Below are positions 5,037 to 61,318 of a stretch of DNA of 64,000 bases, piece by piece. How positions within the stretch are numbered: the stretch's first letter is position 1; the number at the start of each line of letters is the position of its first letter. The notes below the pieces were generated by a model. It saw only the letters and a program-made list of their open reading frames with translations, searched no databases and was not told the origin of the DNA. Both the position numbers and the translations under genes were made by a program. Source of the stretch: Octopus sinensis (Eukaryota); contig NC_043001.1 in NCBI RefSeq assembly GCF_006345805.1, positions 25,606,001 to 25,670,000 on the forward strand. The letters run 5' to 3'.

Positions 5037-6665
5037 TTGGGTCATCCCATAAATAATGCAGTTTTTTCAATTGCATGAACTAAAAGTCAGGAGGATGGGA
5101 TAAACTACCTGCATCAACTTCTATAAAAGCAGGGAGTAATTTTACATCGTCCTTATTCATAGTTCAAGTTTTGAAGAGTGCAGTTCGATTTTAACAGTTA
5201 TGTTTTCAAAGCTATCACTATAATAGAACTGAGAAAGGAGCATATTCGGCATATTTTGCTTTATGAGTTCAATAAAGGCAACAACACAATGGAAAGTGCA
5301 AGAAATATTAATAAGCATAAGAAATATTAATAAGCCAGTATCAACAGTAGTTCCAGAAATTCCTAGTCAGAAACTACAGCCTAGAAAATGAGCTTTGTCC
5401 TGGAAGATCTGTAGAGCTCGACAAGGATGTCCTGCAAAGCTTGATGGAACAAAATCCCATCATAACTGTTGAGCTACCAGAGAAGCTTGGATTTGGTCAC
5501 TCAACAACTCATTGACACCTGCGTGCTATCGGAAAAGTCAGCGAATTGGGTTAATGGGTCCCTCACAAACTTTCCAAGTCTAATCACACACAGTGAGTGA
5601 ATGTGTGCTCTTCTCTGCTGTCACATCTCCTGAATGAATCTTTGGACTGAATAGTGACTGGTGATGAGAAATGGGTTCTCTATGAAAATATGAAGAGCTG
5701 AAGGCAGTGGGTAGGGAAAGGAGAAACACTGGCACTCCAGGCTAAAGAAGGTCTTCACTCATGTAAGATGTTGTTATCTGTTTGGTGGGATATGAAAAGT
5801 TTAGTCCACTTTGAACTTTTAAACCCAAACCAAACAATAACGAAGATCTACTGTAAGCAGCTGGAGCAGCTTAAGTCAGCACTAGAAGAAAAACAACCAT
5901 CTTTGGTTTCAAGACAAAAGGTATTCTTCCATCAGGATAATGCTCGGCCACACACAATGAGGATGACATTCCAAAGGCTGGAGCAGTTTGAGTGGGAAAC
6001 GATGCTCTACCTACCATATTCACCAGACATTGCCCCATCTGATTATCATTTATTTTGTAGTCTTCAAAATCATTTGGATGAAAAAAATATGAATCCTGTA
6101 GTCGAGGTCAGAGCAGTACTGGAGAAGTATTTTTCATCACAGACGAGTGAATTTTGGAAGAGGGGCTTTGCAGGTCTACCAGACAGATGGAAGAACATTG
6201 TAGAAAATGGAGAGGATATCTCTCTATATATAAACGGCAAAATGTCTGTGTGTGTGTCCTTTATACAAATCCACAATTTTTCAGTTAGAGGGCTCGCACT
6301 TTCTATGGTCATTCAAAACCTTCCAAGGGTGGTCGTGCACATCTTTACATTTCCCCAGTCACCCCGCAAAGCCATTAAAAAATCAATAGAAGTGACTTTT
6401 TTGTGAATTTTCTATCCAAAACCCAATCAAAATGCCCGAAACTTGATACGCCAATTGAATGCCAGCTAGCTGTATGTGATTGCTCAGAGATTTGGACAGT
6501 ACTCACGTGTATGTACACACACATGCAGCTGTATATGCATGCACTAGTATTATGACATGGCGTTGTCGGGTCATAGTGCTAGTTATATATTAAAAAAGAA
6601 CTTTATCTTAATCTTGGAAAATAAAAGAAGTATAAAAAAAGCGCATTATATATGGGATGACCCAG
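5037..6665 (+). mobile_element. Mariner (DD34D) DNA transposon, degenerate
   Basis: TIRs ttgggtcatcccataaataatgc / gcattatatatgggatgacccag flanked by TA; transposase remnants GDEKW, HQDNARPH, YSPDIAPSDYHLF with upstream stops. Confidence 0.92.
6219..6582 (+). mobile_element. Non-autonomous Helitron-like element nested in the mariner
   Basis: Starts TCTCTCTATATATAAA and ends ...gtcgggtcatagtgCTAG; inserted between A and T at the transposase C-terminus. Confidence 0.65.
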
Positions 6666-8057: not shown

Positions 8058-8850
8058 GTCTTCAATTAATTTCATTGCTTTTATAGAAATGGAAATTAGT
8101 TTTGAAAGAACTAAATAATAGGTGCAGGCATGGCTATGTGGTCAGAAAGCTTGCTCTGTAACTACATGATTTCAGGTTCAGTTCCACTCTGTGGTACCTT
8201 GGGCAAGTGTCTTCTGCTATAACCCAGGGTCAATCAATGCCTTGTTAGTGAATTTGGTAGATGCAGAGGCCTATTGTGCATATGTATGTATGTGTGTGTT
8301 TGTCCTACCACCAACATTTGACAAATGATGTTGGCTTATTTACCTGCCCATAACTTACCAGTTCAGCAAAAGAGACAGACAAAAAAAAACTACCAGACTT
8401 CAAAAATAATTACTGGGAACAATTTGTTTGACTAAACTCTTCAGGGCAGTGCTCCAGCATGGCCACAGTCCAATGACTGAAACAAGTAAATGATAAAAGA
8501 TAATGCATTTTTCAAAACAGGATAAATGTCTAAAGCCAATTTCATAATTTTTATGGAGACATTAATTTGTTTTGAGAAGAATACAAATATTGATTAAAAA
8601 AACAAATTATGTAATCTGTAAAAGAGAATTAAGTTTTAAGAAGAAAGCATTACTTTATTCTGTTGTGTCTGGGGAGGGTCATTCTCTTTTAGTGCCTTAT
8701 TAACACACTCGCTGGAAAAGTTTCCATTCATTTATTTTTCCAAAAGTTTTCATTGCATCTTGCAACCTTTTCAATAGTTGTTACTTTATCCGTTATATCA
8801 CTCATATAACATCTTGATTCAAATTAATCTTTTGGTGTATATACATGTAG

Positions 8851-8925
8851 GTATCTGTTGAAGGAAATATTGGCTGTGGGAAGACAACATTGCTGAATTA
8901 TTTTGACCAGTTTGATAATGTTGAG
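8851..8925 (+). CDS. TK2: TK2-like exon (P-loop, [25 protein letters not shown])
   Basis: tag| acceptor, |gtaag donor, dNK P-loop. Confidence 0.93.
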
Positions 8926-11900
8926 GTAAGTAAAATTAGTAACATGGTTCACCGAAGATTATTTTTGTTATAGATTTGTCTACTGATTCTTTTCTGCTCT
9001 AGGCACAAGACCCAAAATTTTTGGGGAGAGGGCCAGTTGATTAGATCGACCCTAGTATGCAACTGGTACTTAATTTATTGACCCCAAAAGGATGAAAGGC
9101 AAAGTCGACCTTGGTGGAATTTGAACTCAGAATGTAAAGACAGATGAAATACCACTAAGCATTTTGCCTGGCATACTAATGTTTCTGCCAGCTTGCTGCC
9201 TTTTTATCTACAAGATATTGAAGTAGCAAAAATATCTATAGAAGGGACAAAAACTGTACTGCATAAATATTTTACCCAATCATAAAGTTTTCCTCATGAA
9301 AGTTGAAGCTATGATGTGTTTACCTTGGAATGTTCTATTCTTACATGTAAATTAGCAGAAACTATCAATATATTCAAGTATAATAATGAACTTATACAGA
9401 GTTCAGGTGTACTATAACTCATCAGAAAAAATAGCCAAAAGTGCATGAACAGTATGTAGAATAAAGCACAGAAAGTGAATAGTGAATGAGTCATTAAAAA
9501 AAAAAGAGGTAAGGTTGACATCAGGTGTATTGTTGGTGAATTTCAGGAAGCATGGAAGTTTTGAAGGATGCAGTGTCTTAGCAGCCAACAACTAATGCAG
9601 ATAGTTTATTCCATGCTTCTGCAATTCTGAGCAGGAAAAAATGTTTCTGAAAACCATGGGGGTTGTGTTGTTTTTTGATTTTGTAAGCATGTCCATGAGT
9701 GTTAGACATATCAAATTCAAAAGGGTGCCCAAACTTGTTGGAAAGATAGTGGATAGTCTTGTGGGTGTCTACCAAGTCAGTTGCCAGACGTCAGAGCTTT
9801 GTACTAAAATATAAATAATATAAATAAACCAGTCACATCACCTTATATGTGAATCATGGCAGTGTTTATCTATAATTAAAAGGCAGTATCTAATTTTTGA
9901 CAGGTGCAAGCATTGTTGTAGGTACTGGCATGGTTCTAACCTCAGGCATGGGTTACACACACATACATATATAGAATTTATAATTTATTTATTATATAAA
10001 TTAATTTTGTTTTGTAGACAATGCAAGAACCAATAGAGCAATGGATAAATGTTGATGGCCATAATTCTTTGGTGAGTTTGTTCTTCTTCTAAATTTCATT
10101 TATACAACTTTGAATGTAAAACGATTGTGGAGGTTTGTGGCTTAGTGATTAGGGTTTTGTACCTCTCATCATCATCATCATACATCCATTTTCAATGTTG
10201 GCATGGGTTGGACAGTTTGACAGGAGCTGGCAAGCCAGAGGGCTGCACCAGGCTCCAGTCTTCTGTTGTGGCATGGTTCCTATGGCTGGATGCCCTTCCT
10301 AATGCCAATAACTTTACAGAGTGTACTGGGTGCTTTTTACATGGCAGCAACACAGATGCTTTTTTACATGACACCAGCACTGGAGTAAGATTGTGGCTTT
10401 TGGTTTCTGGACCAGGTAATTCTTTTGTGTTCTTGAACAAATCACTTTGTTCCAATCGATTCAGTTGGTAAAAATGAGTAATCTCATGATAGACCAGTGT
10501 TCTATCCAACAGGGAATATATATACATTATTTACATTCAATGGATATTTGTCCTCATCTTGTTTGTTGTTAGCACAACGTTTCTGCTGATATACCTTCCA
10601 GCCTTCTTCAGGTTTCTTGGGGAAATTTCGAACCGGGTTCTCATTCCTAAGGTATTCTTCGATGTTATTATTATTATTATTGTTCAGGTCATTACTTGGA
10701 ATCGAACTCGGAATCTTGGGGTTAGTAGCCCACACTCTTAACCACTATGCCATATGAAGAATACCTTAGGAATGAGAACCCAGGTTTGAAATTTCCCCAA
10801 GACACCTGAAAAAGGCTGGAGGGTATATCAGCTGAAACGTAATAACAATAAACAAGATGAGGACAAATATCCGTCAAATGTAAATAATGTAAATAATGTA
10901 CATAATTCCTCATCTCTTAAATATAGAACTGTATTAGGGAATATATATATGCCACAGAGTCTGGAAAACCAGCCTTATGAGCTTATGACTCTGGAAAGAC
11001 CATTGATTCCATTTTTTTGTCATGGGGTTATTTGAAACAAATGCTTATGTTTAACTTTAGGCCATTTTATTTGAGCCTATTCTTCTATTTCAAAAAGTGC
11101 AACTCCTTAAATGTAAGGTTTTGACTTTAGCAAAATGAATGTGCATGTATGATAGAGTGTAAGCATCTTGAGAGAAAAATTGGGCATAAGAGGCATCAGA
11201 TGTGATGTGCAAGAGAGAAGACTGCGCTGGTATGGTCATCTGATGCTTATAGATGAGGACAGCTGTGTAAAGAAGTGTCAATTTCTAACTGTGGAGGGAG
11301 CTTGTGGAAGAGGTAGACCCAGGAAGACATGGGACGAGGTGGTGAAGCATGTTCTTCGGATGTTGGGTTTCACGGAGGTGATGACAAGTGATTGAGACCT
11401 TTGGTGATTTGCTGTGCTTCAGAAGACTCATGAAGCCAAGTGAAATCATAGTCATGGTTAGTGCTGATGACACTAGCACCTGTGCTGCTGACACGTAAAA
11501 GTCAGCTGTGGTTGGCATTAGGAAGGCCATCCAAGCATAGAAACCAAGCCAAATCAGACTGGAATCTGGTACCAATTCCAGTCAAACCGTCATAACCCAT
11601 GCTAGCTTGGAAAACAGATACTATATGATGATGATGACAGTGGTGGTGTTGAGAATGAAGGATTCTATTTGTTTTTCTAAAGATGTTTCTAATTATGCTG
11701 GTTGTAATTAACCTTATATAATTGTTAATGCACAAATTTTGTTACTAACATATTCTATCAACAAACTAATTTCTGAAAGAAAATAACGTTTCATTTTTTA
11801 AAACTTTTTTTTCTTAGGAACAACTGTATCAAGATCCGTCACGGTGGAGTTTCACGTTTAACAGCCATGCATTACTGACCCGAGTTGACTTGCATACCAG

Positions 11901-14900
11901 GCCTCAAGTGAGAAACTAAAAGAAAAAAAATTCTTAGTCTGATATATTGAATTATTTCATTCCTCATGACAAAACAGTTGACAGGGCCCTTCTACAGATT
12001 CTCCTAAGTGATAAAATTCTTGTCTTGTGATGACTAATTCTGGCCATCTGTGTATCATTATCATCATCATCATCATCATTTAACATCTGGCATGGTTGGA
12101 GATTCACCAGGAGCAGGCAAGCCAAAGAATAGCACCAAACTCCAATGTCTGGTTTGGCATGATTTCTATGGCTGGATGCTTTTTCTAACACCAACAACTT
12201 TACTTCTCTTACATTCACCTTCCTATAACTTGAGGATGTTTCTTGACCCATCTTTCTTTCCACCTGGGGCAACCATATATCTACCTACTTACTGGCATTT
12301 GTGCTGGTGTGCAGGTGACACATAAAAAAAAACACGATTTTTCCATGACCGTTGCCAGTACCACCTGACTGGCACGTAAAAGCACCCACTACACTCTCGG
12401 ATTGGTTTGCGCTAGGAAGGGTATCCAGCTGTAGTAATTCTGCCAGATCAGATTGGAGCTTGGTGCAGCCATCTGGTTTGCCAGTCCTCAGTTAAATCGT
12501 CCAACCCATGCCAGCATGAAAAGCGGACGTTAAACGATGATGATAATGATATATATAGAACAAATAGTGAGGAATTATCAATCCAGGCAAAATACTTCTT
12601 GAGCTCTCTATTGGCACATCAGGCTATTGGGTCCCTGGTTATGGTTGATCACAATTCTATATTGTAAATCCATGGATGGGCTCCAGATAAACTGGTTTTT
12701 ACACAGAGTGATATGTAAGGAACAAGTTTAAAATAATGGTCATTAGATATAATTCCTTTATTTGAGCAACCTATCAGTAATATACCTACAGTGACTACTG
12801 GAAATAACTGTAAGCCAAATTTGCTCAAATAGAGGAATTATATGTAATGATCATTGTTTCTAACTTGTTTCTTATATATATATATATATGTATATATATA
12901 ATTTAGAGAAAAACCACTATTAAACAATTCAATAAAGAAAGATGTTATTCACACCATATAGAAAACATATGCTATAAACGCTAAGTTTGACATTTTACGT
13001 TTAAATTGTTAGTTAACGAAAATCCTTCGACAAGATAAGTTATATTTCTACTTTAAGAAATATTGTTAAATGCCTTTCGATTATTTATAGTTAATACACG
13101 TATTTTTTTTATATAATTAGTATAAGTTAAGTACATTTATTCTATTATTATTTTTTTTTTTATTATCTTAGACCTGATGAGTAGCTATATTTTTAAATAG
13201 AATTAATTTTAGTTTGATTTAATTTTGAATCGAATTGATTTTATTATTATTATTATCTATTTGAAAATATAGCCATGAAATGTTTGTGGTCTTTTTACTA
13301 CTATTTACTATTTATTGTACTTTATTGATTTAAAATAAGTTTTTTTTATAGCTTACGTTTTCTATATGGTGTGAATAACATCTTTCTTTATTGAATTGTT
13401 TAATAGTGGTTTTTCTCTAAATTATATACATATATTATATATTGTGAAATTTGATTTAAAATTGTTAAATTGAATTTTTCCCTAGAAGTTTTGGAATTAT
13501 ATTCCCTACTATTATATATATATATATCTTGTTGTTTGATAAGAATCAATAAATGTACAGATGATGTAAGTGTTAAAATGGTTTTTAATCAGGTGTTTAT
13601 GTGTATTTCAGACTAAAACTGTCAGGATGCTTGAACGCTCAGTGTTTAGCACTTACCATTGCTTTATCAGAAACAATTTTTTAAGGTAAGGCTATTTCTG
13701 AAAAACATTATTGTTGTTTTAAACAAATCAATTAAAAAAACAAAACAAAAAAAAAACTACATAGATATATGAAGTGTTTGAAATATAATTAACGTGTATT
13801 GATATTTGGAGTATCAAAGATGTAATTTCTTACACTTTTGTCTACACCAATAAACTATGTAGCAGTTTTACAATGAAGCATGGACAAAGAGGAATCTGGT
13901 TTTATGAAGATTGCCTCTCCTTTGCATGTTTTGAAACCTAACATCATGTAGGGTTTCCAATAAAGGTCAGTCCTCATCTGAGCATGTGTTTAAGACCCCT
14001 AATGACAAGTGGAGACTAACACTTTGAAAGTATTATGGTTCACAAACTTGGAGTTATCAGTCAAGCCAGCAGATAACTTCAAGTCAGCCACAATAAAAAA
14101 ATAGAGAAGTAAAATTTACCTTACGGAGATGTACTTGCATAGCGAGTGACTTGATCTGAGATCGTGTGCTGGAACGATGTTTGTGCAGCACAAAGTTTTG
14201 TCAGTGAACAGATTGCGGTCTCAAAGCGCCGAAAATATTTTGACAAATTAAATTTAAATGTTGAAGTGGATCTAACGGTTTTTGTGTGTTTCTTAAATGG
14301 CTTATAAACACCTTCCACACTGCAATTGTTTAAAATTTACATCCTTTTTATATTCTTGCTACAGTAATCTCACTATAATTGCCTTCAACACTAATTACAT
14401 CATCTAGGTAACAAGCTATCTAATGATTCAAACCACCACCAACACCTTCACCACCACCATTGCCAATACTAGTGGCACACTGCATTAAATGTGCAAGCAT
14501 TGTCTTAGTGGTGGATATACAGAGTAGAGTGGTGGATACACAGGATAAAAACAACTTGAGATGAGATAGTTTTATTATACCTTAGAAAATTGTATTGCAC
14601 ACATCAGGTATAAATAAATTAAGTCATATGGAAAGCTCATGCATTACAGACCTATTCACCATACAGAAAAATGTATGTTAACCCTGTGATTGGTAGGAAT
14701 GTTAATCTAGAAGTGATTAAACTCTGGTGTGGTGAAATTCTTTGAAGTTTTCTGAACATTTTACACTGGGTTCAATTATATATATTTTCTTTTCAGTAAA
14801 GATTTAAATGGTCTTGAATTTGCAGTTTTAAAAAGATGGTTCCAGTGGCTGATACAGAAACATAACTTAGGGTTGGACCAAATAGGTATGTATTTTAAAT

Positions 14901-14973
14901 CATACATTTGAATTTAATTGGGCACAGTCTTATTTTAATTGCTATTTTGTTTTCATACAAGACATATATACAT

Positions 14974-15037
<64 letters not shown>

Positions 15038-16866
15038 CTTATAAACACGGGCAATAGAAAAATTATTTCTATGCCAGTATGCTGAGAACAGACTTTAAAT
15101 CGTCAATTTCCACATTTATAATATACATTCACTATAGATATACGTCATACTGAAATCGAGGAAAGCAGGCCAACAGAATTTTAAAAAAAAGTTTGTTATT
15201 TCTATACTGAATCAATTTTGGGATTAATCCTATGCATTTTTCCCTCTTCAGTAGAACATATGATAAGAAATAAATGAAATACTTACATGCACCCATGGAA
15301 AAAGCAAAAGCAAGATATATGTATGTATGTATGTGTCCGTAAAAGTTTGATGCTCTACCGACTGATTGTGTGTGAAAGCACATGGCTTAGTTGTTAGGGT
15401 ATTTGACTCACAATCACAGGGTCGTGAGTTTGATTCCTAGTGGTGCATTGTGTCTTTGAGCAAGATACTTTAGTCCACTCAGCTGGTAATTCAAAGGGCC
15501 TGCCTTGTCACATTCTATATCATGCTGAATCTCCCTGAGAACTATGTTAAAAGTATGCGTGTTTGTGGAGTGAAGGCGGTGAGCTTGGTAGAAACGTTAG
15601 CACGCCGGTCGAAATTCTTATTCTGAGTTCAAATTCCGCCAAGGTCGACTTTGTCTTTCATTCTTTTGGGGTCAATTAAGTAAGTACCAGTTACGCACCG
15701 GGGTCGATATAATTGGCTTAATCCGTTTGTCTGTCCTTTTTTGTCCTCTCTGTGTTTAGCCCCATGTGGGTAGTAAAGAAATAGGTATTTCATCTGCTGC
15801 TATGTTCTGAGTTCAAATTCCGCCGAGGTCGACTTTGCCTTTCATCCTTTCGGGGTCGATTAAATAAGTACCAGTTACGCACTGGGGTCGATATAATTGA
15901 CTTAATCTGTTTGTCTGTCCTTGTTTGTCCTCTCTGTGTTTAGCCCCTTGTGGGTAGTAAAGAAATAGGTATATGTGTTTGTAGAGTGCTCAGTCACTTG
16001 CATATTAATTTCATGAGCAGGTTGTTCCATTCTTCAGATCGCCTGGAACACTTGTTGTCATAATTGATCAACTACCAGTTTGTTATATATATGTTAATAT
16101 ATGATTATAAGGAAAAAATATTTCCTCCAAAGCATAGGCTTCACTTTGAAGTGCTCAGGATTTTAAAACTGAGGTGTTAGAATAATGTATGAGTAAGAAT
16201 CAAAGTTAGGTAAATCAGATTCACATATACATTTATATTTATTCAGCCCGAGACCTAGCGTGTACAAATTTCTCCGAAAGTATATTCAATATATCAAACC
16301 GATTAAAAATATATAGAGTAATCAATATATTAAGAATATACATATCAAAATATATAAATATATTGATATATACATTTAAAATATATTGAAAAATTAAATA
16401 CATATATAGGTCGTCTTGGCGAGCTGGCAGAAACGTTAGCACGCTGGGTGAAATGCTTAGTGGTATTTCATCTGCCGTTATGTTCTGAGTTCAAATTCTA
16501 CCGAGGTTGACTTTGCCTTTCATCTTTTCGGGGTCAATAAATTAAGTACCAGTTGTACGCTGGTGGGGGGGGGGGATGTAATCGACTTAATCCCTTTGTC
16601 TGTCTTTGTTTGTTCCCTCTATGTTTATCCCCTTGAGGGCAATAAAGAAATAAGATTATGAAACAAAGTCTTGAAAAGAATTAAGAGTCTTTAAAAAATG
16701 TATAGGTATTGCTAATCCTATTAACAATCCAACGGCCATTTCTGAGGGTTCAGTTGTCCTGTTATATAAAAGATATTTACATCCATTATAGGACACCACC
16801 TCCTCCATCAGGGAAAATAAGCTTCTAAAGAAGCCTCATAAGTATTTATTTTTTTCTATATTTTTA

Positions 16867-16921
<55 letters not shown>

Positions 16922-17321
16922 GTAGGTCCCGGGTTGATTCGGGGTTAACCACAGTAAATAAGGTACTCAATACATAGCAGAGTAAAATTAATTTATTATA
17001 TAGAAGGAGCTTCTACAGGACTAGAACTGTTTCATTCAAGAGAAATCATCAGGAAGCTAGTTAACAAGAATTGTTTTGGCATTTATACATTTAGGCAGGT
17101 TTAAAGGGGTGGTGGTGGGGGACTTTTTGGGGTAGGCATAGCGTAAAAATATCATACTTAGGGGAGTGGTCAGGAGTCTGGTAAATTAGATAAAAGAATA
17201 AATAAAAGAATAAAAAATAATAGAAGAATAGAGTTTTAGGTAAATAAGGAGATTCTCACTTATACATATACACATATGTATATATATACACACACACACA
17301 CATATACATACACACATATAT

Positions 17322-17373
<52 letters not shown>

Positions 17374-17664
17374 TATATATATACATGCATATATACACAC
17401 ACCCACACATACATATACACACAAATATATACATACACACACATACACATACACACATACACACACATATATACATACACACATGCACACACATGTCCAT
17501 ATATACACATACATATATATATACATATGTGTACCTATACATACCTACACATACACACATATACATACACATACAAACCCATTCCCTTATTTTAATTTTA
17601 TTATTATTTTCATTTATTACTTTTGTTATCTTTGACCGCGGTCATATATATATATGTATGTATG

Positions 17665-17724
<60 letters not shown>

Positions 17725-18873
17725 GGCGGGTGTGCTGAAAGTGTAACTGCTAGAGTAAGAATAGCTTGGGCAAAGTTCAGAGAGCTCTTACCTCTGCTGG
17801 TGACAAAAGGCCTCTCGCACAGAGTGAAGGCAGACTGTATGATGCGTGTGTACGAACAGCCATGCTACATGGCAGTGAAACATGGGCCGTGACTGCTGAG
17901 GATATGCGTAAGCTCGCTAGAAATGAAGCCAGTATGCTCCGATGGATGTGTAATGCCGGTACTCACACTCGGCAAAGTGTAAGTACCTTGAGAGAAAAGC
18001 TGGACCTAAGAAGCATCAGTTGTGGTGTGCAAGAGAGACGTTTGCGCTGGTATGGTCATGTGGCGAGAATGGATGAAGATAGTTGTGTGAAAAAGTGCCA
18101 CACCCTAGCGGTTGAGGGAACCTGTGGAAGAGGCAGACCCAGGAAAACCTGGGACGAGGTGGTGAAGCACGACCTTCGAACTTTAGGTCTCACTGAGGAA
18201 ATGACTAGAGACCGAGACCTCTGGAAGTGTGCTGTGCGCGAGAAGACCCGGCAGGACAAGTGAGTCCACAACCCGTGGCCTTCTACATGGGATGGAGCCA
18301 GCCTACGTATGCATACCTTCCCTTCTTGGGACACAAAACTCTACTTGTGAAGACGTGTTGAGGCAAGTGAGGATCAGAATCAAAATCGATCAATGGAAAT
18401 TGCGGATGTGCTACCAGTGCCGGTGGCATGTTGAAACTCTGCTTGTGAAGACCCATTGAGGCAAGTGAGGATCAGAATCGAAATCGATCAATGGAAATTG
18501 CAGATGTGTTACCAGTGCCGGTGGCATGTAAGAGAACTTTCCGTTTCGCGACCGTTGCCAGCACCGCCCCGTTTCGTGTCCGTTGCCAGCCTCGCCTGGC
18601 CCTCGTGCCGGTGGCACATAAAAAGCACCATCCGTTCGTGGCCGTTTGCCAGCTCTGTCTGGCACCAGTGCGGGTGGCACGTAAAAGCACCCACTACACT
18701 CACGGAGTGGTTGGCGTTAGGAAGGGCATCCAGCCGTAGAAACACTGCCAGATTTGACTGGGCCTGATGAAGCCTTCTGGCTTCACAGACCCCAGTAGAA
18801 CCATCCAACCCATGCTAGCATGGAAAACGGACGCTAAATGATGATGATGATGATGATGATGTATGTATGTATG

Positions 18874-18908
<35 letters not shown>

Positions 18909-18909
18909 G

Positions 18910-18958
<49 letters not shown>

Positions 18959-18989
18959 GTATATATATATATATTATATATATATATAT

Positions 18990-19024
<35 letters not shown>

Positions 19025-19228
19025 GTATATATTATATCATCATCATCATCATTGTCGTTTAACGTCCGTTCTCCATGCTAGCATGGGTTGGACGGTTCGA
19101 CCGGGGTTCTGGGAAGCCAGAAGGCTGCACCAGGCTCCAGTCTAATCTGGCAATGTTTCTACAGCTGGATGCCCTTCCTAACGCCAACCACTCCGTGAGT
19201 GTAGTGGGTGCTTTTTACGTGCCACCTG

Positions 19229-19287
<59 letters not shown>

Positions 19288-19672
19288 TATATTATATATA
19301 TGTAGGTCCCGGGTTGATTCGGGGTTAACCACAGTAAATAAGGTACTCAATACATCGCAGAGTAAAATTAATTTATTATATAGAAGGAGCTTCTACAGGA
19401 CTAGAACTGTTTCATTCAAGAGAAATCTTCAGGAAGCTAGTTAACAAGAATTGTATTGGCATTTATACATTTAGGCAGGTTTAAAGGGGTGTAGGTGGGG
19501 GACTTTTTGGGGGTAGGCATAGCGCAAAAAATCATACTTGGGGGAGTGGTCAAGGAGTCAGTGTTAAATTAGATAGGAGAATAAATAAAAAATAAAAATA
19601 AAAAATAAAAATAAAAAATATAAAATATAAAAAATAAAAATAAAAAATAAAAAATAGAAAATAAAAAATATA

Positions 19673-19709
<37 letters not shown>

Positions 19710-19720
19710 AAATAAAAATA

Positions 19721-19762
<42 letters not shown>

Positions 19763-20128
19763 GGGGGAATAGAGTTTTAGGTAAATAAGGAGATTCTCAC
19801 TTATACCTCTACACATACACACATATATATACAATCACACATACATATACATATCTACACATACACATATATATGTATACATACACACACTCACTTGCAT
19901 AATGTATGTGCGTGTGTGTGTGTGTGTGTGTATATATGTATAGATGTATGTATGTATATATGTATATTTGTGTGTATGCATATGTATGTGTATATGTATG
20001 TGTGTATGTATATATATGTGTGTAAGTGTGTGTATATATGTAAATGTAAGTGTGTGTGCTTGTATGAGAATGTATGTATGTTTGCACACATGTATATATA
20101 TGTGTGTGTATGTGTGTGTGTATGTATA

Positions 20129-20166
<38 letters not shown>

Positions 20167-20438
20167 CATATATATATATATGTGTATATATATGTGTATG
20201 TATATATATGTGTATGTGAGTGTGTGTGTATACATGTGTGTATGTGTATGTATGTATGTATATATATGCGTGTGCATGGGTATATGTATATGTACATATG
20301 CGCGTACGCTCGTGTGTTTATGTATGTGTAGGTACGTAGAGTTATCTATGTGTGTATTTATATGTACATGTGTAAGTATGTGTATATATGTATGTATGTG
20401 TATGTATATGCATGTGTATGTGTGTGTGTGTGTGTATA

Positions 20439-20485
<47 letters not shown>

Positions 20486-20551
20486 ATGTGTGTATGTGTA
20501 TATGTAGGTGTATGTGTGTATGTATATTTTTATATTATGTGTGTATGTATG

Positions 20552-20610
<59 letters not shown>

Positions 20611-20796
20611 TAAATATCTATGTGTGTAAGTTTATTATATGTATGTATCCGTCTATATAATAGGTAACTGCACGTACATATACTTAATATTTATTTTTTG
20701 AGTATGCATGTATGAATAACTGCGCGTATATATATTTACTATTTACTTATTTTTTGAGTATGCATGCTGGTATGAATATATATATGTATATATATG

Positions 20797-20838
<42 letters not shown>

Positions 20839-20957
20839 GTACATGTATGTATTTGTATGTAGGTGTACATGTATGTATATGTGTGTGTATTTATATTTAT
20901 GGGTGTATATGTATAGACTAGCCTTCTAAGAGTGTAGACATGAATCTGTAGGTACGC

Positions 20958-21007
<50 letters not shown>

Positions 21008-21878
21008 TATGTACATGTATGTATTGTATGTAGGTGTACATGTATGTGTGTGTATTTATATTTATTGGTGTATATGTATAGACTAGCCTTCTAAGAGTGT
21101 AGACATGAATCTGTAGGTACGCGTACGTATGTGTATATACGTGAATGTATGTAGATGTATGTATGTATGAATATAACGCGTGCGTGCGTGTATGCGTATG
21201 AGTGTACGAATGAGTGAGTGTACGTGCTAAAGAGTGAGCGTGAGTGAATGAGTAATTGTTTTCCAGTAGACGGATAAATGGTCTGGCTGTCATAGCCAAG
21301 ATGTTTGTGACCAAGCGGCCAAAGATAACAAAAGTAACAAAAGTAATAAACGAAGATAATAAAATTAAAATTAGGGAATGGGTCTGTATTTGTATATGTA
21401 TATATATATGTGTGTATGTGTAGGTATGCATGGGTACACATATGTATATATATGTGTATATATATATATATATATGTGTATGTATATATATGTGTATATG
21501 TATGTGTATGTATGTATATATATGTGTATGTATGTGTATGTGTGGGTGTATATATATGTGTGTATGTGTATATATGTGTATATAGGGACTAGTGTGCTGT
21601 GTGTGCATGTGTGTGTATGGATTAGTGTGTGTATGCGTGTATGTGAGTAGATGTGTGTGTATGTGTATATATATATTTTTTTCTGTGTGTATATGTATGT
21701 GTGGTCGTGTGTGTATATATACATGTGTGTATACGTGTATGCAAGTGAGTGTGTGTATGTATACATATATATGTGTATGTGTAGATATGTATATGTATGT
21801 GTGATTGTATATATATGTGTGTATGTGTAGAGGTATAAGTGAGAATCTCCTTATTTACCTAAAACTCTATTCCCCCTT

Positions 21879-21926
<48 letters not shown>

Positions 21927-22332
21927 TTTTATTTTTATTTTTTTATTTTTTATTTTTATTTTTTTATTTTTTATATTTTTTATTTTCTATTTTTTATTTT
22001 TATTTTTTATTTTTTATATTTTATATTTTTTATTTTTTATTTTTATTTTTTTATTTTTTTATTTATTCTCCTATCTAATTTAACACTGACTCCTTGACCA
22101 CTCCCCCAAGTATGATTTTTTGCGCTATGCCTACCCCCAAAAGTCCCCCACCTACACCCCTTTAAACCTGCCTAAATGTATAAATGCCAATACAATTCTT
22201 GTTAACTAGCTTCCTGAAGATTTCTCTTGAATGAAACAGTTCTAGTCCTGTAGAAGCTCCTTCTATATAATAAATATTATATATATATATATATGTATGT
22301 ATGTGTATGTATGTATAATATATATATATATA

Positions 22333-22374
<42 letters not shown>

Positions 22375-22883
22375 GTATGTATATATATAGTGCCGGTGGC
22401 ATGTCGAAACTCTGCTTGTGAAGACCCATTGAGGCAAGTGAGGATCAGAATCGAAATCGATCAATGGAAATCGATCAATGGAAATTGCAGATGTGTTTAC
22501 CAGTGCCGGTGGCATGTAAGAGAACTTTCCGTTTCGCGACCGTTGCCAGCACCGCCCCGTTTCGTGTCCGTTGCCAGCCTCGCCTGGCCCTCGTGCCGGT
22601 GGCACATAAAAGCACCATCCGTTCGTGGCCGTTTGCCAGCTCTGTCTGGCACCAGTGCGGGTGGCACGTAAAAAGCACCCACTACACTCACGGAGTGGTT
22701 GGCGTTAGGAAGGGCATCCAGCCGTAGAAACACTGCCAGATTTGACTGGGCCTGATGAAGCCTTCTGGCTTCACAGACCCCAGTAGAACCGTCCAACCCA
22801 TGCTAGCATGGAAAACGGACGCTAAATGATGATGATGATGATGATGATGATATATATATATATATATATAATATATATGTATA

Positions 22884-22915
<32 letters not shown>

Positions 22916-22957
22916 GTATAATATATATGTATATATATATATGTATATATATATATG

Positions 22958-22989
<32 letters not shown>

Positions 22990-23001
22990 TATATGTATAT
23001 G

Positions 23002-23040
<39 letters not shown>

Positions 23041-24715
23041 GTCCGGCACTTGTTGCCATGATTGATCATTAGCCACTACACACATTTTTTTTCTCTCCTT
23101 GTTTTTTCTGTGTCCCTTTCTGTAGAAAAGCGTAGGCTTGAAACGTAAAAGATTTTTTCTATTCCTGAGTGTTATACTTATACATCTGTTTGTTTTGTAC
23201 ACCACCTGTCTTCGTCTTTTGTTTTTTTCATAAACTCTCCTATATATATATTTATATATTTTTATATGTACCTTTTTAATGTATTGGTTACTCTATATAT
23301 TTTTAATATGTTTGATATATTGAAGATATGTTTGTATATGTGTATATGTATGTGTGTTTGCACTTGTGTGTGTCTATGAAGAAAAGCAAAACCAAAGCCA
23401 TCACTCGCAAGCAAGTATGACTTGGTAGCATGTACCATGCTTTTGCTAATTGTTTCTTGAACATACATTGACATCCCACTGGAATATGAGAGAGTCAGTG
23501 CTGTACCAGCACTCTGTGTGTGTGTGTGTGTATGTGTGTTAGGTGCAGGTTTGGTTCTGTGGTTAAGAAGTTTACTTCTTAACCACATAATTTCAGGTTT
23601 AGTGGGTGAATTTGGAAAATGGAAACTGAAAAGAAGCCCATTGTGTGTGTATATTTGTGTCTCCTTATCTTGACATTGCATGAGTGATTGTTGTAAATGA
23701 GTGCCATGGTCATACAAGCAGTGTCATTCTTATCCAATATTCTGTGTCTTGCCATAGAGGAATATTAAACTTGCTTGGAAAACAGGTGAGGGTTGCCAAC
23801 AGGAAGAGCATCTGTTCAGAGAAGGTCTGCTTTGGTAAACTCCATCTGACCCATGCAAACAGGGAAAAGTGGACATTAAATGATTGTGATGCTTATTATT
23901 ATTATTTGTATGTCATTATCATAAATTTAGTCCATTCTCCATGCTACCATGCTTGTTCCTTCTCGAGCCATGCCTGGCTCATAGGGCCGGTTTGCCGGTT
24001 TCCTTGGCGTATAGGTTCCCCACCTGGATGGGACGCTGGTCCGTCGCAGGTGAGCTACAAGATGCAGGAGGAATGAGTGAGAGAAAGTTGTGGCGAAAGA
24101 GTCAGCAGAAGTTCGCCATTACCAGAGCCGTGTAGAGCTTAGGTGTTTCACTCATAAACACACACACCGCCCGGTCTGAGATTCGAACCCGCGATCCCTC
24201 GACCGCGAATCCGCTGCTCTAACCACTAGGCCATGTGCCTCCACTCCATGCTACCATGGGTTGTACAAGCTGCCATGTTCCAAGTCAGTTCTTATTCAGA
24301 TGCGTTAGTTGGCATCTCTTGTTTGTATGTGCTATTTATATAATGCGTGTGTATGCATATCTGCATGTGTACTGATATTCATTTTTCTCTCAGTATATTT
24401 AAAGGCAGATCCTCATTTGTGCTTTGAGAGATTGAAAAAAAGATGTAGAAAAGAAGAAGATCCTGTTCCAGTGGTAAGAACCTTTACTGTTATATTCCTT
24501 AAAAACAGCCTTTTGGCATCTCTTTCCTGAAAAGAATGTGGATATCTGGAACACTGAAATCAAAAATGTAATTGATTTTACTAATTTGAAAATTCTGTTT
24601 GCTAAATTTTTTCTGCAAATCAAATTTCAAATTTTTTGATATTTGCACTGTCATTTTTCAGAATGACTTTATCATCATTCATCATTCATTCATTCATTCA
24701 TTCATTCATTCATTT

Positions 24716-24752
<37 letters not shown>

Positions 24753-27700
24753 CTATCATCACCATCATCACCACCATCATCATCGTCATCATCATCATCA
24801 TCATCATCATCAAGCATCTGTTATCCATGCTGGCATGGGTTGGATAATTTGACCAGGGCTGGTAAGCTGAAAGGCTGTACTAGACTCCAGTCTGATTTGG
24901 CATAGTTTCTATGGCTGGATGCCCTTCCTAACACCAACCACTTAACAGAGTGTAATGGGTGCTTTTACGTGCCACTGGCATGGGTGCATTTACGTGCCAC
25001 TGGCACGGGTGCCAGTCGCATGACACCAGTATCTGCTACAACTATAATTTCACTTGGCTTGATGGGTTTTCTGTTCAAGGGTCCCAGTCATTTATCATTA
25101 CTTCCGTGAGACCCAACACTTGAAAGGTGCATTTTACATGTCACCGGTACAGGTGCTAATTATGTGACACCAGCATTGGCCACATTACTACATGACATCA
25201 GCATTGACCACTGTGCCATGCGACACCAGCATTGGACACATTACCTCTGTTACGCCCAACACTTGAATGGTGTTTTTTTATGTGACACCAACATAAGCCA
25301 CGACTATGGTTCCACTTGGCTTGACGGGTCTTCTCAAGTACGGTATATCACCAAAGGTCTTGGTCACTAGTCATTGCCTTCGTGAAGCCCGATGTTCGGA
25401 GATCATGCTTCACCACCTAGTCCTAGCGCAGTCAACTTGTTTCAGTCATTAGACTTTGACCATGCTGGAGCACCTGCTTATAGAATTTTAGTCAAACAAA
25501 CCGCCCCCAGTACTTATGCTATTATTCTTTTTTACTGAACCACTAAGTTATGGGGACATAAACTCATCAACACTGGTTGTCAAGCAGTGGTAGGAGACAC
25601 ACATACATATATAAGACGGGCTTCTTTCAGTTTCCATCTACCAAATTCACTCACAAGATTTTGGTTGGCTTGAGACTATAGTAGAAGACACTTGCCGGAG
25701 GTGCCACACAGTGGAACTGAACCTGAAACCATGTGGTTGAGAAACAAACTACTTACCAAACAGCCATGTCTGTGCCTGTGTTCAGTTTTCCCATGCTCAC
25801 TTGGGTCAGACAGGATTTATTGAGGTAGATTTTCTACAGCTGGATGCCCTTCCTGCCACCAACCCTCACCTATAACCAAAAAGGATAATGCTTTCCCATG
25901 ACCAGATGTGTTTTCATGGAAGATTGGAACTGAAGGATGCTGCTTGCATGATGACACCTGCTTACAACTATTACATGATGTCAAGACAAGAAGATAGTAA
26001 CACACACAACACATGCATACATGCATGCATATGTATGTACTTACACATGTCCATCCATCCGTCCGTCCATCTATCTATCTTCGAGTTTCTATCTACTACA
26101 TCTCACAATTTTTTGTTCACCCCAGGTCTGTAGTAAAAGACACTTCCCAAAATGCCAGGCAGTATGACTGAACCCAAGACCACATTATCGGGAATCAGGC
26201 TTCTCAACCAAACAGCCGTTCCTGGACTGTAATTTATTTATTCATTTCCATAGTAGCTGGTGCTTTGCAACTTTCAGTATCCCATCACCTACTGTCATTT
26301 AGCAATACAGTGTGTTATCTTTCTCAAATTATATCCAGAGAGGTCTTACTTTTAGCTGTGTTGATTTACACATCATCGTCATCATCATCATCGTTTAACA
26401 TCCATTTTCCGTGCTAGCATGGGTTGGACAGTTCGACTGGGGTCTGAGAAGCCAAGAGGCTGCACCAGGCTCCAGTCTGATCTGGCAGTGTTTCTACAGC
26501 TGGATGCCCTTCCTAATGCCAACTACTCCGTGTGTAGTGGGTGATTTTTACGCGCCACCGGCACAGGTGCCAGGGGAAGCTGGCAGCGGCCACGATTGGT
26601 TGGTGCTTTTTATGTGCTACCGGCACAGAAGCCAGGCAAGGCGGCGCTGGCATTGGCCACATTCGGATGGTGCTTTTTACGTGCCACCGGCACAGGTATC
26701 ACAACTATAATTTCCATTTGATATTTATTTTGATGTTGATGTACTTGACTCAATAGGTCTCCTCAAGCACAGCAGGTCATGTGCCACCGGCACAGAAGCC
26801 AGTCAAGGTGGCACAGCAGGTCACCCTATGATCCAAGGTAAACACAGCAGGTTGTTCTGCAATCCAAGGTACTTTGGATGGGCTGGGGCTGTGCGAAACT
26901 GGTGCAAGAAGCAGCCATGAACTCACATTATTTGTCAGGTCTTTGCAGTCACAGCATATGTTTGTGAAAATGTATAGTGTATTTTTATTTATTGATACCT
27001 GCTGCAAATATCACATTTTGACAAATTCTGCTTCTAAACAGGCTTTCAGCTATCAACAAGCTTGTATTAAAATGCAGAGCTCCATCTTTTGTAAGTTAAG
27101 GAGAGATGTCACAGTTTGCTGTTGAGGGCAGGACAGCTCAAACATTGCGTCTCTCAACTTGTTCTTGGTTTAATTTCTATTTTGGTAGCTTCTATTACTT
27201 CGTTGTTAATTCAGTTTTTGACAACCATTCTCTTCACATGTAAATGTTTATGCTTCATCTATCAGACAGTTTTCTTTTTATATTTCTTCCAGTCTTTGCT
27301 AGAAAACCTTCACAAAATCCACGAAGAGTGGCTTATCAAACAATCTTATGGCCCATTACCTGCTCCTGTTAAAGTAAGTATTAAGATATTCTTAGTTATC
27401 AATATCATCCTTGAGATATATTGTTTCTATAGTCTATATTTCCATTTTTAGAATTTTTTCTTTTGTTGCTGAAACTTGTTCATTTAATTTAGAATTATTG
27501 TATTTCTAGAATTAAGTATGAATCTCATATACCACACTGTATGACAAAAGTTCAATGTTGGAAAAGCTGAAAATAATAGACAATATAGCTGATCCTTAGA
27601 GAATTCCATAGGTAATGCAAGTATGGGTTGAGAGAGTTCCATTGAAAGGAATAAAAATAGGATGGCAGAGGAAGATAATTCAGACCCATACAATTGGCTG

Positions 27701-59860: not shown

Positions 59861-59980
59861 ACTTACGGCCATATCACGTTGAAAGCACCGGTTCTCGTCC
59901 GATCACCTAAGTTAAGCAACATTGAGCCTAATTAGTACTTAGATGGGTGATTGCTTGAGAAACCTAGGTGCTGTAAGCGT
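59861..59980 (+). pseudogene. Orphan full-length 5S rRNA copy, probably a pseudogene
   Basis: 120 nt acttacggccatatcacgttgaaagcaccggttctcgtccgatcac...ggtgctgtaagcgt matches the 5S consensus. It has several transitions in the internal control region and no oligo-T terminator. Confidence 0.88.
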
Positions 59981-61036: not shown

Positions 61037-61318
61037 TGATGATGATGGGTTGGACAGTTTGACAGGGACCAACAAGCCAGAAGGTTGTGCCAAGCTCCAA
61101 CAAAATTTTTGGCATGGTTTTCTACAGCTAGATGCTTTTCTTAATACAAACTGCTTTACAGAGGGTACTGAGTGCTTTTTGCACAAATCCTTGTGAAAAT
61201 ATTACAACCCATGATCTGCAGGACCAAACAATGATGATGATGATTTGGGCTGGATATGGCCAGTTTAAATATAAGCATTTTAGAACAAGTAATCTCAGCT
61301 GAAAGGTTAATAAAGATT

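What the first reader, a model, noticed from the sequence alone, without database searches (positions are those of the whole stretch)
19371..22275. Intact-looking sense-strand ribozyme in the TK2 pre-mRNA, paired with its own antisense copy 2.8 kb upstream
Seen: 19371-19901 and 21738-22275 are ~530-bp inverted arms around a 1.8-kb spacer. The right arm holds the HHR in the TK2 sense direction; the left arm and the 16921 copy are antisense. Known: inverted 5' pLTR copies are a typical Penelope insertion structure, and long intronic dsRNA is an ADAR substrate, with editing very abundant in coleoids. Inference: the nascent TK2 transcript could self-cleave in this intron, or be protected because the earlier-transcribed antisense arm sequesters the ribozyme in a long duplex that may itself be edited.
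Basis: partly seen in the sequence, partly recalled or inferred. Interest (0 to 1): 0.7.

Follow-up and report, generated by a model that had tools for sequence, protein, structure and literature searches.

The report
Inverted retroelement ends carrying a hammerhead motif
Two nearly identical, oppositely oriented ends of a Penelope-like retroelement, each with a minimal hammerhead-ribozyme motif, sit in an intron of a TK2-like kinase gene; this is the usual way such elements insert, and the ribozyme is most likely silent because it is buried in a long RNA duplex.

Summary
Arms 19371-19901 and 21738-22275 are inverted copies. Their unique sequence differs by 1 substitution and 1 indel in 352 nt, and they lie 1,836 nt apart. 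A third copy (16913-17646) has the left arm's orientation. The right arm carries, on the + strand, a motif with every invariant hammerhead core base (22208-22258, cleavage A22252|G22253). The + strand is the sense strand of a TK2-like deoxynucleoside kinase gene, and the structure lies in its intron 14886-24393.

The three copies share the ribozyme-side end and differ at the other end, as 5'-truncated retroelement copies do. The left arm abuts the 5' part of a longer sense copy (19902-22275). Copy A and the B+C unit are bounded by (TA)n on all four outer edges, and a 78-nt tail sits at one end only. This is the published Penelope-like insertion pattern, but no RT/endonuclease ORF is present.

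"Intact-looking" is only partly right. Stem II is a U.U mismatch plus 3 bp, no Rfam hammerhead model matches, and three near-identical copies give no covariation. The minimum-energy fold pairs all 51 ribozyme bases with the upstream arm. It is most likely inert transposon debris and a probable ADAR substrate. Cleavage and editing are untested.

The parts
22208..22258 (+). Minimal type-I hammerhead motif in the sense direction of the host gene. Stem I is 22208-22213/22253-22258 (6 bp). CUGAAGA is 22214-22220. Stem-loop II is 22221-22232 (U.U plus UUC/GAA, loop UCUU). GAAA is 22233-22236. Stem III is ACAG/CUGU with loop UUCUAGUC (22236-22251). The predicted cleavage is A22252|G22253.
   Evidence: Read from the sequence; descriptor scan; 0 of 300 randomisations reach this level; energies; no Rfam hammerhead hit.
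21738..22275 (+). Right arm: the 3'-terminal 538 nt of the sense-oriented copy C. It ends 22 nt past the cleavage site, directly at a (TA)n run, and lacks the 78-nt tail.
19902..21737 (+). The 'spacer'. It is TG/TA-rich on the + strand throughout and continuous with the TG-rich inner part of the right arm. It contains unique sequence 21308-21419 that is homologous to the far end of copy A. It is best read as the more 5' part of copy C. It also holds an internal tandem duplication, 20786-21005 ~ 20958-21175 (88%).
   Evidence: GC skew is +0.45 to +0.85 across 19900-21900; sequence; blastn 21308-21419 vs 17644-17539, 79% over 114 nt, E 4e-21; nhmmer.
19371..19901 (-). Left arm: copy B, inverted and 5'-truncated at 19901 inside its CA-rich tract. 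The antisense image of the hammerhead is at 19388-19438. On the host sense strand it carries (AAAAAT)n with 17 AATAAA hexamers.
19293..19370 (-). 78-nt extension (tail) beyond the arm on the ribozyme side. It is present in copies B and A (16913-16990) and absent from copy C.
   Evidence: Alignment A1; direct repeat D12, 16913-17132 = 19293-19512 at 98%.
16913..17646 (-). Copy A: a solitary copy in the left arm's orientation. It has the tail and lacks the (AAAAAT)n/(TA)n expansion. It extends through a CA-rich tract to 17646. The antisense hammerhead at 17008-17058 has the core variant CUGAUGA. It is 96% complementary to 22117-22275.
   Evidence: (I2).
19232..19292 (.). (TA)n run abutting the outer (left) edge of the B+C unit. 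The matching runs are 22278-22371 at the right edge, and 16870-16921 and 17644-17719 at the two edges of copy A.
   Evidence: (TA)>=6 runs cover 8.9% of the intron and 0.25% of the rest of the window, and all four outer edges meet one within 3 nt.
14804..14885 (+). Upstream flanking exon of the TK2-like deoxynucleoside kinase gene (...[27 protein letters not shown]).
   Evidence: tblastn with distant homologues.
24394..24473 (+). Downstream flanking exon ([27 protein letters not shown], the lid region).

Best explanation
This is one composite insertion of the 3' end of a Penelope-like retroelement, or of a non-autonomous derivative, into a (TA)n microsatellite in an intron of a TK2-like deoxynucleoside kinase gene. 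A 5'-truncated sense copy (19902-22275) has a shorter, inverted 5'-truncated copy (19293-19901) joined to its 5' end. A related solitary copy lies 2.4 kb upstream.

The hammerhead motif is the element's own minimal type-I ribozyme near its 3' end. Any role it has is in the element's own transcripts, probably acting as a dimer.

In the host pre-mRNA it most likely does nothing, for three reasons:
1. It is a minimal hammerhead with a weak stem II and no recognisable loop-loop contacts.
2. Only one sense copy is in the transcript, so it has no dimer partner.
3. Its exact complement has already been transcribed, twice, when it emerges, and the arms zip from their inner ends into a duplex of about 530 bp that buries every ribozyme base.

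That duplex is the kind of substrate ADAR enzymes hyper-edit.

Shown here: the anatomy, the strands, the intron position, the motif, the chance level and the equilibrium pairing. Inferred: Penelope ancestry, lack of cleavage, and editing.
For: - Shared 3' end with variable 5' extent. Copies A, B and C align from the ribozyme side. B stops at 19901, A at 17646, and C continues at least to 21308. The ribozyme strand is therefore the element's sense strand and the motif is near its 3' end, where Penelope-like elements carry theirs (PMC8557442, PMC4209133).
- Head-to-head arrangement. The inverted copy directly abuts the 5' part of the longer copy, and the strand composition switches from CA-rich to TG-rich at 19901/19902. 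PMC8557442 describes this as frequent for these elements.
- (TA)n at all four outer edges. (TA)n is a reported preferred target (PMC8557442).
- A tail at one end of the unit only.
- The arms are near identical (1 substitution and 1 indel in 352 unique nt) and share the same microsatellite expansions that copy A lacks, so they come from one event.
- Motif: the invariant core is complete. Stem I is 6 bp and stem III is 4 bp. Chance expectation is below 0.01 per window.
- The only substitution within the motif among the copies falls on the free position N7 (A in B and C, U in A).
- Loop III has a central CUAG. Two copies are predicted to dimerise through an extended stem III (-27.0 against 2 x -8.5 kcal/mol), as described for metazoan type-I and Penelope hammerheads (PMC4209133).
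- Natural active hammerheads with U10.1-U11.1 and stems II of 2 bp are on record (PMC3088659).
- Sequestration: the MFE pairs 51 of 51 motif bases with the left arm. Duplex energies are -369 and -247 kcal/mol for the two unique blocks, against -7.3 for the active fold.
- Penelope min-hammerheads cleave poorly in vitro even as dimers (PMC4209133).
- Hyper-editing targets dsRNA formed by oppositely oriented repeats. It is exceptionally high in Octopus bimaculoides, and Penelope is massively edited in lizard (PMC5625713).
Against: - No reverse transcriptase or GIY-YIG ORF lies in or next to the copies, and none appeared among the long ORFs of the window that were scanned.
- No further family members could be obtained. 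Two metagenome scans gave nothing related, and the protein database holds no close relative of the host gene.
- Conservation and covariation of the stems therefore could not be tested.
- The motif departs from the published metazoan Penelope min-hammerhead consensus. It has no G10.1-C11.1 pair, no long stem II, and a real stem III.
- No Rfam hammerhead model matches.
- The tail is 78 nt, not the reported 30-40.
- The intron is so rich in microsatellites that (TA)n at the edges could be part of the element or a later expansion rather than the target.
- Equilibrium folding says nothing about co-transcriptional kinetics.
Confidence: 0.6

Rival explanations
1. The sense-strand hammerhead is active in the nascent TK2-like pre-mRNA and cuts the intron co-transcriptionally. 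This would happen either before the duplex closes or after it is loosened by editing or helicases.
For: All invariant core bases are present, with a GUA cleavage triplet, a 6-bp stem I and a 4-bp stem III. U10.1-U11.1 is the best-tolerated mismatch at that position and occurs in active natural hammerheads, as do very short stems II (PMC3088659). Local hairpins fold faster than long-range pairing.
Against: The active fold is only 1.8% of the local ensemble and loses to an AAGA/UCUU misfold. Stability is no better than shuffles (z 0.28). There are no recognisable tertiary contacts, which minimal hammerheads need at physiological Mg2+ (PMC3088659). Penelope-type motifs show low activity in vitro and work as dimers (PMC4209133), and only one sense copy is in this transcript. 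The complement is already present, and the arms zip towards the motif from 21738.
Confidence: 0.1
2. The hammerhead-like motif is a coincidence inside a repeat that is not Penelope-derived, for example another retroelement with a (TA)n tail.
For: There is no RT/GIY-YIG ORF. No Rfam hammerhead hit was found. The motif lacks G10.1-C11.1 and the long stem II said to mark real Penelope min-hammerheads (PMC4209133). Three near-identical copies give no covariation. At roughly 0.003-0.007 per 64 kb, a genome of gigabases would hold a hundred or more such chance motifs, and the scan looked at many windows.
Against: The motif sits where a Penelope ribozyme should: on the sense strand, near the 3' end, in an element with the inverted 5'-truncated partner, a one-sided tail and (TA)n edges (PMC8557442). 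Loop III carries the palindromic centre typical of dimer-forming metazoan hammerheads. LINE twin priming inverts the more 5' segment and does not duplicate the 3' end, so it does not explain the arms.
Confidence: 0.18
3. The inverted arrangement did not arise at insertion. It is either an assembly artefact or a later DNA-level fold-back duplication primed in the partly self-complementary CA/TA/TG microsatellite.
For: The arms are almost identical. The junction at 19901/19902 lies in microsatellite sequence where CA-rich switches to TG-rich. Such insertions are known to cause assembly problems (PMC8557442).
Against: There is a 1.8-kb spacer with unique sequence, not a zero-spacer palindrome. 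The arms differ in microsatellite length at several places. The left arm has a 78-nt tail that the right arm lacks, so neither is a simple copy of the other as they now stand. Both outer edges of the unit meet (TA)n, as expected for one insertion.
Confidence: 0.07

Closest known systems
Minimal type-I hammerheads in the pseudo-LTRs of Penelope-like elements (Cervera and De la Pena 2014, PMC4209133)
   Same: A complete core on the element's sense strand near its 3' end. Open stem I of similar length. No recognisable loop-loop contacts. A palindromic centre in loop III that allows a dimer with an extended stem III. The motif is dispersed mostly as solitary or oppositely oriented truncated copies.
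   Different: Stem II here is U.U plus 3 bp, instead of 6-8 bp starting with G10.1-C11.1 after a bulged base. Stem III is a real 4-bp helix with an 8-nt loop, rather than absent or 1-2 bp. No ORF-bearing copy is at hand.
Penelope-like insertion architecture: partial tandems, an inverted 5'-truncated copy at the 5' end, a one-sided tail, and a (TA)n target (Craig et al. 2021, PMC8557442)
   Same: An inverted 5'-truncated copy immediately adjacent to the 5' side of a longer copy, a tail on one side only, (TA)n at the edges, and abundant 3' ends.
   Different: The tail is 78 nt rather than 30-40. No direct pseudo-LTR pair flanks an ORF. (TA)n targeting was reported chiefly for Naiads, which lack canonical hammerheads.
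Intronic inverted repeats as ADAR hyper-editing substrates (Porath et al. 2017, PMC5625713)
   Same: Two oppositely oriented copies of a repeat within one transcript, nearly perfectly complementary over about 530 nt. The paper reports that Octopus has exceptionally high hyper-editing and that Penelope is massively edited in lizard.
   Different: No RNA data here, so editing at this locus is an expectation and not an observation. The source organism was not verified with the tools.
Natural hammerhead variants with U10.1-U11.1 and very short stem II (Perreault et al. 2011, PMC3088659)
   Same: The same mismatch at the first position of stem II, and a short stem II.
   Different: According to that paper, hammerheads generally need a stem I-stem II tertiary contact, often a pseudoknot, for activity at physiological Mg2+. 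None is apparent here.
Ultraconserved intronic hammerheads of amniotes (HH9/HH10; cited in PMC7229834)
   Same: A sense-strand hammerhead inside an intron of a protein-coding gene.
   Different: Those match Rfam models and are conserved single-copy sequences. This one is a young repeat copy with no Rfam match.

Membership tests
Hammerhead ribozyme | Invariant core: C3 U4 G5 A6 N7 G8 A9, G12 A13 A14, the A15.1-U16.1 pair, and H17 at the cleavage site | tested here: met
   CUGAAGA ... GAAA ... UA|G at 22214-22252. Copy A has CUGAUGA.
Hammerhead ribozyme | Three helices around the core, with stem II normally opening with G10.1-C11.1 | tested here: inconclusive
   Stem I is 6 bp and stem III is 4 bp. 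Stem II is U10.1.U11.1 plus 3 bp with a hairpin energy of -0.1 kcal/mol. The U.U variant is known in active natural examples (PMC3088659).
Hammerhead ribozyme | Match to a curated covariance model (Rfam Hammerhead_1, _3, _II, HH9, HH10) | tested here: not met
   No hammerhead family was listed at gathering score. None was listed at E<=10 on 101-nt stretches around copy C or copy A. None was among the 150 listed of 159 matches on 6.5 kb.
Hammerhead ribozyme | Covariation that preserves the stems among relatives | tested here: inconclusive
   Only three copies are available, and within the motif they differ at N7 alone. No outside relatives were found.
Hammerhead ribozyme | Site-specific self-cleavage giving 2',3'-cyclic phosphate and 5'-OH ends | not testable with these tools
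   Needs an in vitro transcript assay or end-specific RNA sequencing.
Penelope-like element | An ORF with a telomerase-like reverse transcriptase and a GIY-YIG endonuclease | tested here: not met
   No such ORF lies in 16.9-22.3 kb. Ten long ORFs of the window gave only mariner-type domains in Pfam. At best these copies are truncated or non-autonomous.
Penelope-like element | Variable 5' truncation with a shared 3' end, and an inverted 5'-truncated copy adjacent to the 5' end | tested here: met
   The 5' ends are at 19901 (B), 17646 (A) and at or beyond 21308 (C). B abuts the 5' part of C.
Penelope-like element | Insertion bias for microsatellites, notably (TA)n | tested here: met
   All four outer edges lie within 3 nt of a (TA)>=6 run. 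Whether the run is the target or part of the element is not resolved.
Penelope-like element | [quoted passage not shown] | tested here: inconclusive
   A 78-nt extension is present at the left end of the B+C unit and in A, and absent at the right end. The reported size is 30-40 bp (PMC8557442).
Penelope-like element | A hammerhead motif on the sense strand near the 3' end | tested here: met
   The motif ends 17 nt before the end of copy C, and 95 nt before the end of copies A and B including the tail.
Metazoan non-LTR retrozyme | Short head-to-tail tandem repeats, each unit carrying a type-I hammerhead | tested here: not met
   There is no tandem array. The copies are 2.4-2.8 kb apart, and two of the three are in the opposite orientation.
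C/D box snoRNA | A C box (RUGAUGA) and a D box (CUGA) next to a terminal stem | tested here: not met
   Copy A gives only a sub-threshold SNORD102 hit (17.2 bits against a 47-bit gathering score). No CUGA D box precedes the 3' stem, and copies B and C have UGAAGA.

The most novel reading that the evidence does not exclude
The motif is an active cephalopod-type hammerhead variant (U10.1.U11.1, 3-bp stem II, dimer-capable stem III) that current models miss. In this intron the earlier-transcribed antisense arm acts as a built-in inhibitor. Its grip would be tuned by ADAR editing or helicases, so that cleavage of the TK2-like pre-mRNA, and with it mitochondrial nucleotide salvage, depends on editing.
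Probability: 0.03. Interest if true: 0.7.

Novelty: new member of a known kind. Interest (0 to 1): 0.22.

Why it matters
As it stands this is an ordinary piece of transposon anatomy. The three ingredients are all documented: hammerhead motifs at the ends of Penelope-like elements, their head-to-head inverted insertions, and hyper-editing of intronic inverted repeats.

Two things are of modest use:
- The motif is missed by every Rfam hammerhead model although its core is complete. A census of the family in the source genome could define a hammerhead variant for cephalopod Penelope-like elements.
- The locus is a clean natural test case in which a ribozyme and its perfect antisense lie in one transcript. 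It could be used in a minigene to measure how far an upstream complement suppresses co-transcriptional self-cleavage.

There is no sign that the host gene depends on it.

Tried and rejected
- Rfam at gathering score on the whole window found only a 5S rRNA. At E<=10 on 6.5 kb and on 101-nt stretches around copies C and A and the tail it gave no hammerhead and no tRNA hit. The many mir-297, mir-466 and mir-3149 sub-threshold hits are TG/TA microsatellite artefacts.
- The start of the 78-nt tail (GGTCCCGGGTTGATTCGGGGTTAACCA) looked like a tRNA T-arm with CCA, or a primer-binding site on the other strand. ARAGORN found no tRNA in the window and Rfam found nothing, so the idea was dropped.
- A C/D snoRNA reading of copy A was rejected because there is no D box and the C box is mutated in B and C.
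- A MITE or foldback DNA transposon was rejected. Copy A is solitary yet shares 78 nt beyond the supposed terminal inverted repeat with B, and the two ends of the unit are not symmetrical.
- LINE twin priming was rejected because it does not duplicate the 3' end.
- Search for family members elsewhere: an exact 24-nt motif scan of JGI metagenomes gave 0 hits. A gapped core-plus-stems pattern gave 13 hits, all unrelated sequences without a stem I.
- nhmmer and blastn within the window found only the three copies.
- Search for the host gene's orthologues, to fetch the orthologous intron, returned only two distant dNK proteins and no close relative. Presence or absence in sister species could therefore not be tested. 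I ran no further search on spurious ORFs of the repeat for the same reason.
Full report
**1. The observation**

The two arms are real. blastn aligns 19371-19901 with 22275-21738 at 96.1% over 539 columns. The repeat finder reports two 142-nt blocks at 99% complementarity at the outer and inner ends of the arms.

A global alignment shows that the unique sequence is almost identical. There are 0 substitutions and 1 indel in the outer 210 nt, and 1 substitution in the inner 142 nt. The remaining differences are A/T length changes inside an (AAAAAT)n/(TA)n tract. The spacer, 19902-21737, is 1,836 nt.

A third copy at 16913-17483 has the left arm's orientation. It differs from the left arm by 10 substitutions and 5 gap columns in 292 nt. 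blastn and nhmmer find no further copies in the window.

**2. The hammerhead motif**

On the + strand, 22208-22258 reads AGCUUC CUGAAGA UUUCUCUUGAAU GAAA CAG-UUCUAGUC-CUG UA|GAAGCU.

- Every invariant core base is present.
- Stem I has 6 pairs.
- Stem III has 4 pairs, including A15.1-U16.1.
- The cleavage triplet is GUA.
- The antisense images are at 19388-19438 and 17008-17058.

A descriptor set at the candidate's level finds only these three sites on both strands of the window. It found none in 300 second-order Markov randomisations of the window, and a laxer version found one in 2 of 300. The motif is therefore unlikely by chance in one window. At that rate, though, a gigabase genome would hold a hundred or more such chance motifs, and the first-stage scan covered many windows.

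**3. How intact it is**

Stem II is the weak point. It opens with a U10.1.U11.1 mismatch, followed by U-A, U-A and C-G and a UCUU loop. The hairpin energy is -0.1 kcal/mol.

- The active secondary structure scores -7.3 kcal/mol. An alternative that pairs AAGA of the core with UCUU scores -8.5. The active structure is 1.8% of the ensemble.
- The 62-nt stretch is no more stable than its shuffles (z = 0.28).
- No Rfam hammerhead model matches. This holds at gathering score, among the 150 listed matches at E<=10 on 6.5 kb, and at E<=10 on 101-nt stretches around copy C and copy A.

Against this, Perreault et al. (PMC3088659) report natural hammerheads whose stem II begins with U10.1-U11.1. They note that this mismatch supports more activity than any other, and that stems II of two pairs are common. 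In that paper, tertiary contacts between stems I and II are what give hammerheads robust activity at physiological Mg2+. I see no such contact here.

Two small points favour a real, element-borne ribozyme:
- The only substitution within the motif among the three copies falls on the free position N7.
- Loop III has a central palindrome, CUAG. Two copies are predicted to dimerise through an extended stem III (-27.0 against 2 x -8.5 kcal/mol). This is the design described for metazoan type-I and Penelope hammerheads (PMC4209133).

"Intact-looking" is fair for the core and unproven for the whole.

**4. The host gene**

Six-frame motif searches and tblastn with two distant homologues place dNK-family exons on the + strand. 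They lie at 8845-8925 (P-loop), 10027-10075, 11818-11886, 13612-13680 (ERS motif), 14804-14885, 24394-24473 (lid) and 27299-27370.

The concatenated exons hit Drosophila deoxynucleoside kinase best among solved structures (E about 1e-24), ahead of dCK and dGK. The two database hits carry PF01712. "TK2-like" is reasonable, although TK2 itself could not be told apart from a multisubstrate dNK.

The exons ending at 14885 and starting at 24394 join without missing residues. The whole structure therefore lies in one 9.5-kb intron, and + is the sense strand.

**5. What the repeat is**

The arms are not the whole element. Copy A and the sequence to the left of the right arm share a further unique block beyond a CA/TG-rich tract: 21308-21419 against 17644-17539, 79% identity, E 4e-21.

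The "spacer" is TG-rich on the + strand throughout and continuous with the inner part of the right arm. The left arm is CA-rich up to 19901, where the composition flips.

The three copies therefore share the ribozyme-side end and differ in how far they extend the other way. B ends at 19901, A at 17646, and C at or beyond 21308. This is the pattern of 5'-truncated retroelement copies. It makes the ribozyme strand the element's sense strand and puts the motif near its 3' end.

- B is an inverted, shorter copy joined to the 5' part of C.
- B and C share large (AAAAAT)n and (TA)n expansions that A lacks. Together with their near identity, this points to one event.
- A and B carry 78 nt beyond the point where C ends.
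- Copy A and the B+C unit are bounded on all four outer edges by (TA)n runs. Such runs cover 8.9% of this intron and 0.25% of the rest of the window.

Craig et al. (PMC8557442) list exactly these traits for Penelope-like elements. [quoted passage not shown] They also name a bias for microsatellites including (TA)n, hammerhead motifs near the 3' ends, and non-autonomous derivatives that share the 3' end.

What is missing is the defining ORF. No reverse transcriptase or GIY-YIG endonuclease is present here or among the long ORFs of the window that were scanned. The motif also differs from the published metazoan Penelope min-hammerhead consensus of a long stem II, G10.1-C11.1 and little or no stem III (PMC4209133). 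I therefore file it as Penelope-like in architecture, with membership unproven.

**6. What it does in the host transcript**

Folding 19293-22300 as one RNA gives an MFE of -1495 kcal/mol. In that fold, 516 of 538 right-arm bases, and all 51 bases of the motif, pair with the left arm. The two unique blocks alone give duplex energies of -369 and -247 kcal/mol. Copy A offers a second complement, 96% over 159 nt (I2).

The left arm is transcribed first. The right arm emerges inner end first, so the duplex can zip towards the motif, which is the last part to appear.

Three more points weigh against cleavage:
- The weak local fold described above.
- The absence of a second sense copy for dimer formation.
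- The low in vitro activity reported for Penelope-type motifs (PMC4209133).

The likeliest outcome is no cleavage. This rests on equilibrium folding and published behaviour of related motifs, not on a measurement.

A near-perfect 530-bp intramolecular duplex is the standard ADAR hyper-editing substrate. Porath et al. (PMC5625713) find that hyper-editing tracks dsRNA formed by oppositely oriented repeats. They report it is exceptionally high in Octopus bimaculoides and that Penelope is massively edited in lizard. Editing here is therefore expected but untested, and I could not verify the source organism.

**7. Rivals**

- An active ribozyme in the nascent transcript remains possible (about 0.1).
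- A chance motif in a non-Penelope repeat is the main rival (about 0.18). There is no ORF, no model match and no covariation.
- An assembly artefact or a later fold-back duplication is less likely (about 0.07). There is a 1.8-kb spacer with unique sequence, the arms differ in microsatellite lengths, only one arm has the tail, and both outer edges meet (TA)n.
- MITE, twin-priming, tRNA-related and snoRNA readings were examined and rejected.

**8. Verdict**

The Penelope-type reading and the sequestration idea are supported as far as sequence can show. The claim of an intact, possibly self-cleaving ribozyme is not supported.

This is a new instance of known things and not a new kind of system, so interest is low (0.22).

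The decisive work is a census of the family in the source genome, a cleavage assay, end-specific and editing-aware RNA sequencing, and long reads across the locus.

Noticed in passing
window 59861-59979 (+): Full-length match to 5S rRNA (96.1 bits against a gathering score of 38, E 1.3e-19). It could be a 5S gene, a pseudogene or a 5S-derived SINE head.
   Followed up: no
window 17720-18330 (+) and 61303-62100 (+); tails 18336-18861, 22407-22849 and about 62100-62650: Two near-identical copies of a retrotransposon-like ORF (...[20 protein letters not shown]...; no Pfam hit). Each is followed by the same GC-rich block of about 520 bp ending in (GAT)n. A third, ORF-less copy of that block lies just right of the right arm (direct repeats D13-D16, 99-100%). 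It looks like a LINE 3' end and its SINE-like partner. That classification is from my own recollection and was not tested.
   Followed up: partly
window 19575-19725 (+): On the host sense strand the left arm carries an (AAAAAT)n tract with 17 AATAAA hexamers. It is transcribed before its complement, so it might act as an intronic polyadenylation site.
   Followed up: no
window 19293-19322 and 16913-16942 (+): The end of the 78-nt tail reads GTAGGTCCCGGGTTGATTCGGGGTTAACCA. This resembles a tRNA T-arm plus acceptor end, or on the other strand a primer-binding site. ARAGORN and Rfam do not support either reading, and its origin is unexplained.
   Followed up: yes
window 5702-6403 (+) and 38989-39390 (-): Mariner-type transposase remnants: Transposase_1 (E 7e-19) and the Mos1 HTH_48 domain (E 8e-23).
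   Followed up: partly
window 17250-17600 and 19900-21700: Dozens of sub-threshold Rfam hits to mir-297, mir-466, mir-3149 and similar families (up to 60 bits, gathering 90) fall on TG/TA microsatellite. They are low-complexity artefacts.
   Followed up: yes
window 20786-21005 and 20958-21175: A tandem duplication of about 170-220 bp (88% identity) inside the spacer, containing the unique string GACTAGCCTTCTAAGAGTGTAGACATGAATCTGTAGGTACGCG.
   Followed up: no
window about 49900-52510 (+): Open frames resembling RNA-recognition-motif exons (for example LLVRNLSYDSTESSLRSYFKDATDVRLPTHPDSGKPKG and AFIEFESIPKAKSALNKMDGSNVDGRSVRCCYA). They suggest a second, RRM-protein gene downstream of the kinase gene on the same strand.
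   Followed up: no
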